From the IMG/VR virus record IMGVR_UViG_3300031857_000005, positions 240,366-304,365 of that record: DNA of 64,000 nt; one strand, written 5' to 3'. Of the stretch, positions 49,944 to 55,677 are shown piece after piece (position 1 is the first letter of the stretch; each line of letters opens with the position of its first letter). The position numbers and the translations under genes were made by a program. A model generated the notes under the pieces. The model saw only the letters and a program-made list of their open reading frames with translations. It ran no database searches and was not told the DNA's origin.

Positions 49944-50873
49944 ATGAATATTCCGAATTATTACGACATATTAGGTGTTCCTGAAACTGCAACCCAAGAT
50001 GAGATAAAAAAAGTATATCGTAAACTGGCAAAAGAAAATCACCCTGATGCTGGTGGTGATGAGGAAAAGTTTAAGCAAATTGCTGAAGCATATGATACTA
50101 TTGGTGACGATAACAAACGACAAGAGTATGATATGAGAAGAAAGAACCCATTTGCAGGAATGGGAGGAGGTGACGATATATTCCAACAGATGTTTAATCA
50201 GGCATTTGGTAATCGTAGACAAAAAAATGTGGTACATGATTTAGTTATTGATACTGAATTAAAAGTTACTGAATCATATTTGGGTGCGAATAAAGAAATC
50301 ACATATCGTAGGAAATTAAAATGTGATCCATGTAATGGTAGTGGGGGTGAGAAGAAAATTTGTCCCGAATGTAATGGACAAGGTTCTGTAGTGAGACAGA
50401 TGGGGTCTGGTATGTTTATACAAATGGTACAAGTTGCTTGTAACACTTGTTCAGGACATGGACGAGTTATTACAAATCCTTGTCATATTTGTAATGGTAG
50501 TGGGACTAAAGATGAGATGAAAACTGTTGAAGTTAAATTACCTAATGGTATTGATGATGGACAATTCATCCGATTACAAGGTGTTGGGGATTTTAGAAAC
50601 GGTGTTTATGGTAACTTAGTTGTTAGAGTTAAATTGGTTTCTGATAATAATTTTGAAAAGTACGGACCTCACTTAATTTATAATGCTTATTTCACATTGG
50701 ATGATTTGAAGAAGAGTGATTTTGAAATACCTCATCCTGACGGTACGGTAAGGTTAAGATTCCCAAAGACATTTGATACAACAAAACCCTTAAGAGTTAA
50801 ATCAAAAGGGTTTAAAGGTGAAGTGATAGGTGACTTGTTGGTTAACCAGCATGTCCGATTTGAAAGGGATTAA
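49944..50873 (+). CDS. dnaJ: DnaJ chaperone (J domain, zinc finger, C-terminal domain)
   Basis: YYDILGV...HPD; four CxxCxGxG repeats; TATCTTTG element at 49907-49914 upstream. Confidence 0.93.
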   Translation: MNIPNYYDILGVPETATQDEIKKVYRKLAKENHPDAGGDEEKFKQIAEAYDTIGDDNKRQEYDMRRKNPFAGMGGGDDIFQQMFNQAFGNRRQKNVVHDLVIDTELKVTESYLGANKEITYRRKLKCDPCNGSGGEKKICPECNGQGSVVRQMGSGMFIQMVQVACNTCSGHGRVITNPCHICNGSGTKDEMKTVEVKLPNGIDDGQFIRLQGVGDFRNGVYGNLVVRVKLVSDNNFEKYGPHLIYNAYFTLDDLKKSDFEIPHPDGTVRLRFPKTFDTTKPLRVKSKGFKGEVIGDLLVNQHVRFERD

Positions 50874-51046
50874 AATAAAGAAATTACATCTTTAATTATT
50901 TGGATGGTACCGTAAATTCCGGCACCAAACATATATAATGAGAATATTAATAATCCCCATTGTGTTTTACTCATACCTTTTTTACATTGACTACATCCTG
51001 TAACTTGTGTTGCTTCTTTTTTTGATTGTTCTACTTCTTGTTTCAT
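50870..51046 (-). CDS. Small CxxC + TM protein, 58 aa (not in ORF track)
   Basis: MKQEVEQSKKEATQVTGCSQCKKGMSKTQWGLLIFSLYMFGAGIYGTIQIIKDVISLF; starts 4 nt after the upstream gene's stop. Confidence 0.65.
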   Translation of the reverse strand: MKQEVEQSKKEATQVTGCSQCKKGMSKTQWGLLIFSLYMFGAGIYGTIQIIKDVISLF

Positions 51047-51050
51047 AATG

Positions 51051-51536
51051 TTATTTTTGATAATAAATAATTATATCACCAATTATTTTATAAGTGAATG
51101 ATTGGTTAATAATTGATTCTCTTATCACAATATCATCATTTCTTGTTATTATAATCTCTCTAGTGTTAACATTATTGAATAATTTTTTTGGGTGACGGAT
51201 TGAGGTATTTATTGTTATTTTAAGATTATTATTTTTTATGTTGTAATGAGTAAATAATTGATAATCAAAACCTAAACGGTAATCACGAATCAATAATGCA
51301 CATTTATGTTTACAGGTATTAAATAAAATAAATGATTGATTAATTAAAACATCGTATATGTCCGACATTGAGTCCATGATTTCATCCGTTGGGACTCTAA
51401 TAAATTCACCACTACCGGTAATAGCTCGGAAAGATTCATAAGTTTGAACGATACTCAATGGTTGACCATTAATGGTAACATTTTTAATAGGAACACTCTC
51501 AACAATTATACTCTTAAGTAATGGTAATAAATTCAT
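51051..51536 (-). CDS. Hypothetical late protein with an LLKSIIVE leader
   Basis: ATG 51536 lies 6 nt after TATTTATA (minus strand, 51543-51550). Confidence 0.65.
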   Translation of the reverse strand: MNLLPLLKSIIVESVPIKNVTINGQPLSIVQTYESFRAITGSGEFIRVPTDEIMDSMSDIYDVLINQSFILFNTCKHKCALLIRDYRLGFDYQLFTHYNIKNNNLKITINTSIRHPKKLFNNVNTREIIITRNDDIVIRESIINQSFTYKIIGDIIIYYQK

Positions 51537-51551
51537 ATATAATATAAATAC

Positions 51552-51581
51552 AAGAAACCCCACCTTTTTAGAGATGGGGTT
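51552..51581 (-). terminator. Intrinsic terminator closing the small transcript
   Basis: AACCCCATCT...AGGTGGGGTT followed by TCTT on the minus strand. Confidence 0.75.
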
Positions 51582-51707
51582 ACAATTATTTCATTCCTAA
51601 AATTGAGGTAATCAACCCAGACCGATTCACCCAGTCATTAGCGGTCAGTTTGTTTAATAGGATTCTGACAACCTGTTGATAATATTGATTACTCAACCAC
51701 ATCAACA
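51552..51707 (-). ncRNA. Candidate structured small RNA (about 150 nt); alternatively a near-leaderless 38-aa ORF at 51586-51702
   Basis: Has its own host-type promoter and terminator; GNRA-capped 5' hairpin; long-range helix enclosing two stems. Confidence 0.5.
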
Positions 51708-51710
51708 ATA

Positions 51711-51741
51711 CAAAGATAGTGAAGTTTTTGGTTCTGCCAAA
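51711..51741 (-). promoter_or_regulatory. Bacteroidota-type (early) promoter with an overlapping inverted repeat
   Basis: TTTG-N19-TATCTTTG on the minus strand; AAGTTTTTGG-ttctg-CCAAAACTT at 51722-51745. Confidence 0.75.
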
Positions 51742-51773
51742 ACTTTTGTAATCTTTTTTAAAAAAAATATTCA

Positions 51774-51808: not shown

Positions 51809-52648
51809 ATGTTAAGTTATATCGGAGGTAAGAGTAAAATTGGAAAGTGGATAGTCCCTTTCTATGATAATAATATGGAAACATATGTTGAAACATTCGG
51901 AGGGATGTTTTGGTGTTTCTTCAACATGGACTTAAAACAGTTCCCAAACCTAAAGAAAGTTGTTTATAACGACTTTAATCCACTTAATTACAATCTGTTT
52001 AAATGTATTCAGAACCCAACTGAATTATTGAATGCAATTAACGCAATTGATTGTCAGAAATTTGGTGTAGAAGTAACTCCACCAATTTATAAAGAACAGT
52101 TTATCAGGTTTCAGGCTGAAATTTTTAGTGAAGGTTTCAGTGTAGAACCTGGTAATTATGAAGTTGCTGCTAAATACGCTTATGTCCTTACACAGGTTTT
52201 TAGTGGTTCTAAACCTGAGACAAGTTCATTCATTGACTTGAAAGGTAAATACAAATCAAAGTATCTTACATTTAGAGATAAATTATCTAAACCTGATTGG
52301 GTAGAACATTTCTTGAAAATTACGGATGTTGAAAATATGGATTTTGAGGATGTCATTAAAAAGTATGATTCACCAACAACATATTTTTATGTTGATCCAC
52401 CATATTGGAAAACTGAAAATTACTATTCAAATCACGATTTTGACAGAGAAGATCATGAAAGACTTGCAAATATATTAAAAGGAATGGAAGGTAAATTTAG
52501 TTTGTCGTATTATGACTTCCCGTTGTTATCGGAATGGTTCCCTAAAGAACAATATAGTTGGGAGAAAAAAGAATTCGCTAAGGCGGCGGCAGCCAAAAAA
52601 GGTACCAAACAAAATATGGGTGAAGAATTACTTATACTGAATTATTAA
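51809..52648 (+). CDS. DNA adenine methyltransferase, D12/Dam family
   Basis: YIGGKS, YVETFGG, YNDFN, YVDPPY, LSYYD, EELLILNY. Confidence 0.92.
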   Translation: MLSYIGGKSKIGKWIVPFYDNNMETYVETFGGMFWCFFNMDLKQFPNLKKVVYNDFNPLNYNLFKCIQNPTELLNAINAIDCQKFGVEVTPPIYKEQFIRFQAEIFSEGFSVEPGNYEVAAKYAYVLTQVFSGSKPETSSFIDLKGKYKSKYLTFRDKLSKPDWVEHFLKITDVENMDFEDVIKKYDSPTTYFYVDPPYWKTENYYSNHDFDREDHERLANILKGMEGKFSLSYYDFPLLSEWFPKEQYSWEKKEFAKAAAAKKGTKQNMGEELLILNY

Positions 52649-54866: not shown

Positions 54867-54897
54867 TTTGGCAATTACAAATTAATTACTATCTTTG
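54867..54897 (+). promoter_or_regulatory. Bacteroidota-type (early) promoter
   Basis: TTTG-N19-TATCTTTG. Confidence 0.75.
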
Positions 54898-54921: not shown

Positions 54922-55677
54922 ATGATTTATACACCAGAACTTATCAAATCCGTAGCCCCTTCAGTATTCGCAACATCAGCATCAAGCAAGTTGTCTGACA
55001 AGTATGTCTTTGTACCAACCGATCAAGTCATTGAATTTTTCGATCGTGAAGGTTGGGAAATTTCAGATGTTAAACAAACAGGTAAAGGAATTCACGCAAC
55101 CCATCAAATTAGATTCCGTAATGGAGAACTTCCTTCAGTTGGAGACACATTGGTTGAAGCAATTGTTCGTAACTCACACAATGGTATGTCAACATTCTCA
55201 GTCAGTGCTGGACTTCACCGATTGGTATGTTCTAACGGACTTACAGTACCTACATCAGTTGCCGACAAATTTAATGTTAGACACAGTGGGTTTGAACTTG
55301 ACGATGTGAAACGATTGATGGACGGTTTTGCAAAGAAACTACCAACAATCCAAGGATCTGTTGGACGAATGATGGAACGAGAACTTACCATTGACGAACA
55401 AATTCAATATGTTCAGAAAGCGTCAAAAATCCGATGGGCTGAAGGATCAATCCCAACTGACAACCAACTTGTTGACATCCTTACACCAAATCGTGTGGAA
55501 GATAGTAATAACGACTTGTGGACAACCTTCAATGTAGTACAAGAGAAGTTTGTACGAGGAGGGTTTGACTACCGAACTAAAACAGGACGAAAGTCAAAAC
55601 TACGAGATCTTAAAAGTATCTTGGCGGTAAACAACATCAACACAAAACTTTGGGAACTTGCCGAAGAAATGATTTAA
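54922..55677 (+). CDS. DUF932/DUF945-family protein
   Basis: APSVFA, SDKYVFVPT, NSHNG, RLVCSNGL, DLWTTFNVVQE, NTKLWELA. Confidence 0.85.
   Translation: MIYTPELIKSVAPSVFATSASSKLSDKYVFVPTDQVIEFFDREGWEISDVKQTGKGIHATHQIRFRNGELPSVGDTLVEAIVRNSHNGMSTFSVSAGLHRLVCSNGLTVPTSVADKFNVRHSGFELDDVKRLMDGFAKKLPTIQGSVGRMMERELTIDEQIQYVQKASKIRWAEGSIPTDNQLVDILTPNRVEDSNNDLWTTFNVVQEKFVRGGFDYRTKTGRKSKLRDLKSILAVNNINTKLWELAEEMI

What the first reader, a model, noticed from the sequence alone, without database searches (positions are those of the whole stretch)
51552..51745. Standalone ~150-nt early transcript with two mutually exclusive RNA folds
Seen (minus strand): an exact Bacteroidota promoter (TTTG-N19-TATCTTTG, 51741-51711), about 125 nt of sequence, then an intrinsic terminator. 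Fold A is a 5' hairpin UGUUGAUGUGGUUGA-GUAA-UCAAUAUUAUCAACA (51707-51674) with a GNRA loop. In fold B the same UUGAGUAAUCAA (51696-51685) pairs with UUGAUUACCUCAA (51615-51603), closing a junction that holds GUCAG/CUGAC and GACUGG-GUGAA-UCGGUC stems. An imperfect inverted repeat (51722-51745) overlaps the promoter and could be an operator. Inference: an early phage sRNA acting as a switch or decoy. The 5' hairpin runs GUUG...CAAC like Bacteroidota type II-C/VI-B CRISPR repeats, so a solitary-repeat RNA anti-CRISPR is one speculative option. Alternatively the folds gate translation of a 38-aa ORF (MWLSNQ..., 51702-51586) whose AUG lies in hairpin A.
Basis: partly seen in the sequence, partly recalled or inferred. 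Interest (0 to 1): 0.75.

Follow-up and report, generated by a model that had tools for sequence, protein, structure and literature searches.

The report
Phage RNA partnered with a nuclease-like protein
This is a real, previously undescribed structured RNA gene of freshwater jumbo phages that always sits next to one small nuclease-like protein gene, so it most likely keeps that protein in check, as RNA antitoxins do, and is not a two-state switch, an anti-CRISPR decoy or a peptide gene.

Summary
The promoter, the ~155-nt transcript unit and the terminator are real and conserved in about 21 related phage loci. Rfam has no match. Covariation supports three helices: P2 (GUCAG/CUGAC), P3 (GACUGG/UCGGUC) and a P4 hairpin. 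A short H-type pseudoknot (AGG with the CCU of the P2 loop) and an invariant UGAAA tail are also conserved.

Fold B is not conserved. The 38-aa ORF, the operator and the CRISPR-repeat idea are not supported.

The RNA co-occurs with one ~160-aa protein family (ORF161) down to 25% protein identity, in three layouts:
- RNA, terminator, then ORF (the window).
- Two tandem RNA units, an inserted ORF, then the ORF161 homologue.
- RNA gene convergent with the ORF.

So it is an independent gene tied to that protein, not merely a leader. The ORF161 model (pLDDT 87) weakly resembles RelE/HigB toxins and phage T4 RegB endoribonuclease.

Best reading (about 0.4): a type III-like RNA regulator or antitoxin of a RegB/RelE-like nuclease. 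No transcript or binding data exist.

The parts
51711..51741 (-). Bacteroidota-type promoter: -33 TTTG (51741-51738) and -7 TATCTTTG (51718-51711)
   Evidence: Exact motif. All 21 homologous RNA genes keep a -7 box and 19 also keep the -33 TTTG. The transcription start at about 51707-51704 is inferred, not mapped.
51674..51707 (-). It is a variable module closed by GUUG/CAAC.
   Evidence: It folds in 14 of 17 variants with different apical sequences and lengths, and is absent in L014, L020 and L021. It looks like a palindromic paralogue of P4.
51670..51674 (-). S1 5' strand (AGGUU). It pairs with the CCU-containing part of the P2 loop (51664-51659) to give an H-type pseudoknot.
   Evidence: AGGR/YCCU or a shifted register is possible in 24 of 25 units, including the most distant ones (L055, L056). 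L024 carries one compensatory A-U to G-C change. The window has only 3-4 bp.
51644..51669 (-). P2 hairpin: GUCAG (51669-51665), an A-rich 16-nt loop containing CCU (51661-51659), and CUGAC (51648-51644)
   Evidence: 99% of cells are paired across 25 units, and 3 of 5 pairs show compensatory changes, for example GUUGGG/CCCAAC and GUUAGG/CCUAAC.
51620..51636 (-). P3 hairpin: GACUGG-GUGAA-UCGGUC
   Evidence: 4 of 6 pairs show changes on both sides, for example AAUCGG/UCGAUU, AACUGA/UCAGUU and UAUCA/UGAUA.
51606..51618 (-). P4 hairpin: GGGU-UGAUU-ACCU
Evidence: 98% paired. There are G-U to G-C and U-A to A-U changes.
51584..51599 (-). Conserved single-stranded tail UAGGAAUGAAAUAAUU. The UGAAA core (51593-51589) is kept in nearly every unit (L055 and L056 deviate). 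The UAGGA (51599-51595) could alternatively pair with the P2 loop.
   Evidence: RUGAAAYAA is present in almost every unit, including the first unit of the tandem pairs. The 3' UAGGA/UCCUA pairing is lost in L053, L020, L021, L052, L055, L056 and in unit 1 of L049-L051.
51544..51581 (-). Intrinsic terminator: stem-loop 51581-51556, a U-rich tail, and an invariant GUAUUUAU (51551-51544)
   Evidence: Terminator scan. At least 8 different stem sequences occur in relatives, and all keep a hairpin followed by a U tract.
51051..51536 (-). ORF161: the partner protein, 161 aa, with a possible RelE/RegB-like endoribonuclease fold
   Evidence: The family has 45 clusters at 50% identity. T111 is invariant, and R47, D85, D91, S112, H115 and P116 are nearly invariant. 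The AF2 model has pLDDT 86.6. Weak fold matches point to RelE, HigB, ParE, CdiA-CT and T4 RegB. There are no Pfam, PHROG or PADLOC hits.
50870..51046 (-). ORF58: a small CxxC protein with one C-terminal transmembrane helix, the last gene of the unit
   Evidence: It is conserved downstream of ORF161 in L020-L030 and is kept where ORF161 is deleted.

Best explanation
The locus is a stand-alone gene for a ~155-nt structured RNA of a new family. Its parts, 5' to 3', are:
- a variable 5' hairpin, P1;
- an H-type pseudoknot formed by AGG and the CCU of the P2 loop;
- hairpins P3 and P4;
- a single-stranded UGAAA-containing tail;
- an intrinsic terminator.

The RNA is the dedicated partner of the adjacent ~160-aa protein ORF161, which is probably a RelE/RegB-like endoribonuclease. 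I propose that it works like a type III (RNA) antitoxin or regulator. In cis, its terminator lets only a fraction of transcripts run on into ORF161-ORF58, so RNA greatly outnumbers protein. In trans, the folded RNA binds the protein and holds it inactive, or acts as its pseudo-substrate, possibly at the UGAAA tail. This would set when and how strongly the nuclease acts after infection.

Shown: the gene anatomy, the structure, and the co-inheritance with ORF161. Inferred: transcription, binding, inhibition, and nuclease activity.
For: 1. The RNA is real. It is more conserved than the neighbouring gene: the core is 81-85% identical in nucleotides against 61-68% for ORF161 DNA. 97% of cells are paired, 9 of 15 pairs show compensatory changes, 0 of 500 shuffles reach this, and slid controls fall to 18-52% paired.

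2. The RNA and ORF161 co-occur in every locus examined (about 20 distinct), down to 25-26% protein identity, in three layouts. The first is RNA-terminator-ORF. The second is two full tandem 84-nt RNA units with one terminator, an unrelated ORF, then the ORF161 homologue (L049-L051). The third is the RNA gene convergent with the ORF, sharing a bidirectional terminator (L053, L054, L056).

3. In the window only about 12-20 nt, with no promoter motif, separate the terminator from the ORF161 ATG. This is the layout described for type III TA loci (PMC5086642) and for the prophage RCd22-AbiF pair (bioRxiv 10.1101/2025.04.15.648962).

4. The RNA unit can be repeated in tandem: 2 units in L049-L051 and 1.5 units in L012.

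5. ORF161 was lost twice by independent internal deletions (L013, L014) while the RNA stayed intact. The reverse was never seen.

6. With the confident model, the top structural ranks are dominated by RelE, HigB, YafQ, YoeB, ParE, BrnT and CdiA-CT toxins and by T4 RegB. A BFVD 'site-specific RNA endonuclease' also matches with probability 0.95.

7. RegB is early, dispensable and tightly self-regulated, and an anti-RegB partner has been speculated (PMC3014915).

8. RNA antitoxins that are not repeats are known, for example AvcI (PMC10511110).
Against: - There is no direct evidence that the RNA is made, that it binds ORF161, or that ORF161 is a nuclease or toxic.
- The fold matches are weak (Z 3.3-5.3, below the tool's noise guide of about 8) and Foldseek against PDB gives nothing significant.
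- ORF161 has no sequence similarity to ToxN, CptN, TenpN or any PADLOC model.
- The window has a single 84-96-nt unit, unlike the arrays of 34-45-nt repeats in classical type III antitoxins.
- The convergent layout lacks the shared-promoter logic.
- Co-occurrence would equally fit an RNA that activates, guides or scaffolds the protein.
- ORF58 is also always nearby and is unexplained.
Confidence: 0.4

Rival explanations
1. RNA cofactor, guide or scaffold. The RNA and ORF161 form a ribonucleoprotein in which the RNA is needed for the protein's activity or specificity, rather than inhibiting it.
For: The same co-occurrence across three gene layouts fits this reading. A conserved scaffold with a variable 5' module is reminiscent of guide-plus-scaffold RNAs.
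Against: The variable module is a self-paired hairpin, it is absent in three lineages, and it looks like a leftover of a previous repeat unit. No target complementarity above chance was found in the phage genome for the conserved tail. The RNA is retained after ORF161 deletion, which is odd for a pure cofactor, although those deletions may be recent.
Confidence: 0.2
2. Cis-acting leader. The structured RNA senses a ligand, a protein or temperature, and controls read-through of its terminator into ORF161-ORF58, acting as a riboswitch or attenuator.
For: The window shows the order promoter, conserved aptamer-like core, terminator, then the ORF 12-20 nt later with no promoter in between. The core sequence is highly conserved. 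The U tract is interrupted, so termination is probably partial.
Against: The RNA gene is convergent with the ORF in L053, L054 and L056. In L049-L051 it is separated from the ORF161 homologue by an unrelated ORF. No conserved antiterminator pairing was found, because terminator stems change while the core does not. No Rfam riboswitch matches. The RNA is single copy in the 304-kb genome. A passive cis effect of the terminator is already part of the favoured model.
Confidence: 0.15
3. Trans-acting base-pairing sRNA or decoy. It is aimed at host or phage mRNAs or at a host factor, and its neighbourhood with ORF161 is only synteny.
For: It has a strong promoter, a 5' protective hairpin, a terminator, and an invariant single-stranded tail GGAAUGAAAUAAUU that could serve as a seed.
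Against: Linkage to ORF161 survives rearrangement and 25% protein identity, which plain synteny does not explain. A search for the tail's complement in the phage genome found 3 sites with 2 mismatches, against about 1 in each control orientation. The host is unknown, so host targets could not be tested.
Confidence: 0.15
4. One reading: a two-state RNA switch (fold A against fold B), a solitary-repeat RNA anti-CRISPR, or folds that gate a 38-aa peptide.
For: Fold B is thermodynamically possible in the window (-14.1 kcal/mol). The hairpin runs GUUG...CAAC.
Against: Fold B is absent in L014, L020, L021 and L029, and is weakened by changes that preserve P4. Hairpin length varies from 15 to 34 nt, and no similar repeat was found by the degenerate pattern in the genome-contig collection of about 185,000 prokaryote species. 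The peptide is not conserved.
Confidence: 0.04

Closest known systems
RCd22 RNA with AbiF toxin (abiF motif, Rfam RF03085) of a Clostridioides difficile prophage (bioRxiv 10.1101/2025.04.15.648962)
   Same: It is phage-borne. One promoter drives a ~100-130-nt structured ncRNA, followed by a Rho-independent terminator and then the protein gene, with no promoter in between. The RNA carries repeated structural modules. It was first taken for a cis-regulatory motif.
   Different: The RNA family is different, with no Rfam hit. The protein is different: Abi_2/Cas13-like there, against a ~160-aa RelE/RegB-like candidate here. Binding and toxicity are shown for RCd22-AbiF and only inferred here. Here the pair also occurs in a convergent layout.
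Classical type III toxin-antitoxin systems (ToxIN, CptIN, TenpIN) (PMC5086642)
   Same: The order is promoter, RNA, terminator, then a ~160-170-aa protein gene. The RNA is pseudoknotted and can be repeated in tandem. The protein can be lost but not the RNA.
   Different: Here there is usually one 84-96-nt unit, not 2-5.5 repeats of 34-45 nt. The protein is not in the ToxN, CptN or TenpN families and does not resemble their MazF/Kid-like fold. Processing was not tested.
Phage T4 RegB endoribonuclease (PDB 2HX6; PMC3014915)
   Same: It is a small phage protein with a RelE/YoeB-like fold, expressed from a host-type early promoter, dispensable and tightly controlled. Structural matches have Z 3.8-4.0, and a BFVD RegB matches with probability 0.95.
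   Different: There is no sequence similarity and the fold match is weak. RegB has no known RNA partner. Its GGAG/Shine-Dalgarno targeting would have no obvious counterpart in Bacteroidota hosts.
AvcI-AvcD (PMC10511110)
   Same: It is a precedent for a single, non-repetitive sRNA that binds and inhibits a protein toxin.
   Different: The toxin there is a dCTP/dCMP deaminase, no intergenic terminator is predicted, and the system is bacterial, not phage-borne.

Membership tests
Any Rfam 15 family | Covariance-model match at or near the gathering score | tested here: not met
   No hits at gathering score over the whole window. The best permissive hits lie far below their thresholds and fall over the promoter or terminator.
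Type III toxin-antitoxin (ToxIN/CptIN/TenpIN) | One promoter, an RNA gene, a Rho-independent terminator, then the toxin ORF | tested here: met
   This holds for the window and most relatives. It does not hold in the convergent loci L053, L054 and L056.
Type III toxin-antitoxin (ToxIN/CptIN/TenpIN) | Antitoxin built of at least 2 tandem direct repeats of about 34-45 nt | tested here: not met
   The window has a single 84-96-nt unit. Two full 84-nt units occur only in L049-L051, and 1.5 units in L012.
Type III toxin-antitoxin (ToxIN/CptIN/TenpIN) | Toxin belongs to ToxN/AbiQ, CptN or TenpN (MazF/Kid-like fold) | tested here: not met
   There are no Pfam, PHROG or PADLOC hits. The fold neighbours are RelE/ParE/RegB-like, not MazF/ToxN-like.
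Type III toxin-antitoxin (ToxIN/CptIN/TenpIN) | The RNA binds and neutralises the toxin, and the toxin processes the RNA | not testable with these tools
   Complex prediction did not fold the protein-RNA job. This needs expression and binding assays.
RelE/ParE/RegB (BECR-type) endoribonuclease fold, for ORF161 | Two helices packed on a 3-4-stranded antiparallel sheet, with a significant structural match | tested here: inconclusive
   The model has pLDDT 86.6. About 20 of the top 35 VIA-align ranks are such toxins and cover nearly their whole chains, but Z is only 3.3-5.3. Foldseek against PDB gives E of at least 0.1. A BFVD RegB matches with probability 0.95 and E 0.045.
Riboswitch / transcription attenuator | Always in the 5' leader of the regulated gene, with a conserved terminator/antiterminator alternative | tested here: not met
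   The layout is convergent in L053, L054 and L056, and an ORF is inserted in L049-L051. No conserved alternative pairing with the terminator's 5' arm was found.
RNA anti-CRISPR (solitary repeat unit) | Close resemblance to a CRISPR repeat of the host, with constant repeat length | tested here: not met
   The hairpin is 15-34 nt long and is absent in three lineages. The degenerate pattern found no match in the genome-contig collection of about 185,000 prokaryote species.
Small-protein gene | Reading frame and peptide conserved in relatives | tested here: not met
   The frame reads 'M-stop' in L018, L008, L013, L016 and L030. L029 has no ATG. The product is 2-7 aa in L014, L020 and L021.
Bacteroidota housekeeping-sigma promoter | -33 TTTG and -7 TAnnTTTG, 17-23 nt apart | tested here: met
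   The motif is exact in the window. 21 of 21 homologous RNA genes keep the -7 box and 19 keep both elements.

The most novel reading that the evidence does not exclude
A new class of RNA-protein module in jumbo phages. An 84-nt pseudoknotted RNA unit, single or in tandem, directly gates a RelE/RegB-fold endoribonuclease. This would be the first RNA (type III-like) antitoxin for that toxin fold, and the 'anti-RegB partner' that T4 biology never found.
Probability: 0.3. Interest if true: 0.8.

Novelty: new variant of a known kind. Interest (0 to 1): 0.62.

Why it matters
If the reading is right, it extends RNA-antitoxin (type III-like) control to a different toxin fold, RelE/RegB-like. It also shows that lytic jumbo phages of Bacteroidota carry such modules themselves, probably to time an mRNA-cutting enzyme during takeover of the host. 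Whatever the mechanism, it adds a covariation-supported RNA family absent from Rfam, together with a defined protein partner. Simple expression, rescue and binding tests can therefore be done without first isolating the phage.

Tried and rejected
- Rfam, at gathering and permissive thresholds: no family.
- blastn and tblastn against 50,697 cultured-phage records: no relative, so no isolate is at hand.
- RNA-seq. The public runs holding this DNA are almost all DNA libraries. Four laid runs gave only scattered low-depth contigs, so transcription is neither shown nor excluded.
- Complex prediction for protein plus RNA: not folded, so it gives no evidence either way.
- Host or other genomic copies. 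Two degenerate patterns found nothing in the genome-contig collection. The own genome holds a single copy.
- Trans targets of the conserved tail in the phage genome: at chance level.
- Conserved antiterminator: none found.
- The 3' pseudoknot (UCCUA with UAGGA), which RNAalifold chose at first, was rejected as a family-wide feature because it is lost in several lineages.
- ORF161 function by Pfam, PHROGs, PADLOC, PDB sequence search and ESM Atlas: nothing.
- The first AF2 model was too poor (pLDDT 66), so the alignment was deepened.
- The ORF inserted in L049 is not a paralogue of ORF161.
- The peptide, operator, anti-CRISPR and fold A/B switch readings were rejected.

Full report
WHERE WE ARE. 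The window is the last 64 kb of a 304,365-bp IMG/VR phage record with about 31% G+C. Its relatives come from lake and other freshwater metagenomes. The finding lies on the minus strand, between a divergent Dam methyltransferase gene (51809-52648, +) and a small minus-strand unit. That unit holds ORF161 (51536-51051) and ORF58 (51046-50870), and it converges on a phage DnaJ gene.

THE OBSERVATION. The following are all present:
- the exact Bacteroidota promoter TTTG-N19-TATCTTTG (51741-51711);
- a 5' hairpin (51707-51674);
- the GUCAG/CUGAC and GACUGG/UCGGUC stems;
- a 10-bp terminator (51581-51556) with a U-rich tail.

The RNA folds better than shuffles (z = -2.9). Rfam has no match.

RELATIVES. 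DNA patterns and searches with the neighbouring protein recovered about 21 distinct homologous loci. The intergenic RNA is better conserved than the adjacent gene. The core is 81-85% identical in nucleotides, against 61-68% for ORF161 DNA and 46-57% at the protein level. The conserved ATG-initiated frame is not kept: it reads 'M-stop' in five variants, has no ATG in L029, and gives 2-7 aa in three others. The element is therefore non-coding.

STRUCTURE. On an alignment of 25 units, P2, P3 and P4 are 97% paired. Nine of 15 pairs show changes on both sides, no shuffle out of 500 reaches this, and slid controls drop to 18-52% paired. The same picture holds on an alignment not fitted to the model.
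- P2 changes from GUCAG/CUGAC to GUUGGG/CCCAAC and GUUAGG/CCUAAC.
- P3 changes from GACUGG/UCGGUC to AAUCGG/UCGAUU, AACUGA/UCAGUU and UAUCA/UGAUA.
- P4 (GGGU-UGAUU-ACCU) shows G-U to G-C and U-A to A-U changes.

The CCU in the A-rich P2 loop can pair with an AGG directly 5' of P2. This gives a classical H-type pseudoknot. It is possible in 24 of 25 units, including the most distant ones, and has one compensatory change. The alternative 3' partner, UAGGA, is lost in several lineages. A single-stranded tail, RUGAAAYAA, is kept in nearly every unit. Terminator hairpins are kept with at least eight different stem sequences.

Fold A is real as a 5'-terminal hairpin, P1. It is closed by GUUG/CAAC, and its apical part varies with compensation. 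Its length ranges from 15 to 34 nt, and it is absent in L014, L020 and L021.

Fold B is not conserved. It cannot form where P1 is short or missing. In L018, the substitutions that strengthen P4 weaken fold B from -14.1 to -7.9 kcal/mol. The complementarity is explained by P1 being a palindromic look-alike of P4, probably a remnant of a preceding repeat unit.

The promoter-overlapping inverted repeat is restricted to close relatives. A degenerate pattern for the hairpin found nothing in the genome-contig collection of about 185,000 prokaryote species, so there is no hint of a CRISPR repeat.

WHAT CHANGES THE INTERPRETATION. The RNA family, modelled as R1, sits next to an ORF161 homologue in every locus examined, down to 25-26% protein identity. 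The arrangement varies:
1. Promoter, RNA, terminator, then ORF161 12-20 nt later, with no promoter in between. This is the window and most relatives.
2. Two full tandem 84-nt RNA units and one terminator, then an unrelated acidic ORF, then the ORF161 homologue (L049-L051).
3. The RNA gene convergent with the ORF161 homologue, sharing a bidirectional terminator (L053, L054 and L056).

Every RNA gene keeps its own TAnnTTTG promoter. The RNA is therefore an independent gene. Its linkage to this protein family is functional and not positional.

ORF161 was lost twice by independent internal deletions, in L013 and L014. In both cases the RNA, ORF58, DnaJ and Dam stayed intact. The reverse, a protein without the RNA, was not seen. 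The RNA is single copy in its genome and absent from the genome-contig collection by pattern.

THE PROTEIN. ORF161 has no Pfam, PHROG, PADLOC or PDB-sequence match. Its family is small, with 45 clusters at 50% identity. Conserved polar residues are R47, D85, D91, T111, S112 and H115, within the motif NTSI[RK]HP.

With a deeper alignment the AF2 model is confident (pLDDT 86.6). Foldseek against PDB finds nothing significant. In an exhaustive structural comparison, the top ranks are filled by toxins of one kind. These are RelE, HigB2, YafQ, YoeB, ParE and BrnT, CdiA-CT RNases, and phage T4 RegB. They cover residues ~25-120 of the model and nearly the whole target chains.

The Z-scores, 3.3-5.3, are below the tool's own noise guide, so this is a lead and not a result. 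In the viral library, a 'site-specific RNA endonuclease' (RegB) of a T4-like phage matches with probability 0.95. Several uncharacterised phage proteins match better, including one from the Bacteroidota phage PTm1.

By the literature, RegB has a RelE/YoeB-like fold. It is made from an early promoter, is dispensable, and is tightly self-limited. An anti-RegB partner has been speculated (PMC3014915).

MOST LIKELY MECHANISM (inference). The module resembles type III toxin-antitoxin loci, with one promoter, an RNA, a terminator and a ~160-170-aa toxin (PMC5086642). It resembles the prophage RCd22-AbiF pair even more closely. There, a ~100-130-nt structured RNA with two motif copies ends at a terminator, no promoter lies before the toxin gene, and the RNA acts both in cis by termination and in trans by binding the toxin. 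AvcI shows that RNA antitoxins need not be repeat arrays.

I therefore propose that the RNA is made in excess from a strong host-type promoter. Its terminator limits read-through into ORF161-ORF58, and the folded unit binds and restrains a RegB/RelE-like nuclease. Tandem units, the pseudoknot and the loss pattern (protein lost, RNA kept) fit this. The single long unit, the unrelated protein fold and the convergent loci mean it is not a member of the ToxIN, CptIN or TenpIN families.

Confidence in the partnership is high, about 0.8. Confidence in inhibition, as opposed to activation or guiding, is about 0.4.

LIMITS.
- No transcript evidence exists. The public RNA runs gave only stray contigs.
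- The protein-RNA complex job was not folded.
- No cultured phage carries the module.
- The host is unknown.
- The alignment used for the main covariation count was fitted to the model's structure, which favours that structure. The earlier MAFFT alignment gives the same helices.

Noticed in passing
window 50870-51046 (-); L020 823-1002; L023 1025-1186; L053 801-944: A small protein (51-59 aa in the loci checked) with an N-terminal CxxC and one C-terminal transmembrane helix follows ORF161 in the canonical loci. In L053 a 47-aa transmembrane ORF lies upstream instead. It may be a third component of the module.
   Followed up: partly
L013 8889-8974 (-); L014 5857-5941 (+): There are two independent internal deletions of ORF161. 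L013 keeps aa 1-3 and 130-163, and L014 keeps aa 1-13 and 145-160. The RNA, ORF58, DnaJ and Dam are intact in both. The L014 RNA has also lost P1 and the 5' AGG.
   Followed up: yes
L012 8884-9104 (+): This RNA is a 1.5-unit chimera. An L009-type P1 and P2 and a degenerate P3 are followed by a complete window-type unit. That suggests recombination between units of different lineages.
   Followed up: partly
window 51544-51551 and 51587-51591 (-): An invariant GUAUUUAU just after the terminator can pair with the AAAUA of the conserved tail. This would extend the terminator helix across an internal loop. Both strands are invariant, so covariation cannot test it.
   Followed up: partly
L020 1-120; L021 560-700: tRNA-like sequences lie directly upstream of the RNA promoter. 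One has a GGTTCGAATCC T-arm and a CCA end. A second has an anticodon-like loop CUCAUGA and a long variable arm. Neither ARAGORN nor Rfam calls them.
   Followed up: partly
window 54867-54897 (+): A second promoter of the same flavour (TTTGGCA...ACTATCTTTG) lies in front of a DUF932 gene (54922-55677). The window holds 8 such motifs against 3.6 expected.
   Followed up: no
window 49944-50873 (+); 51809-52648 (+): The phage encodes a full-length DnaJ, with J domain, CXXCXGXG zinc-finger domain and C-terminal domain, and a Dam-type N6-adenine methyltransferase. They flank the module and are syntenic in most relatives. Relatives also carry an Hc1 histone-like gene nearby.
   Followed up: no
window 51352-51543: One metatranscriptome run (X17) holds a single 192-nt contig whose end lies just downstream of the terminator, at the start of ORF161. 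The depth is 2.3, too thin to interpret.
   Followed up: no
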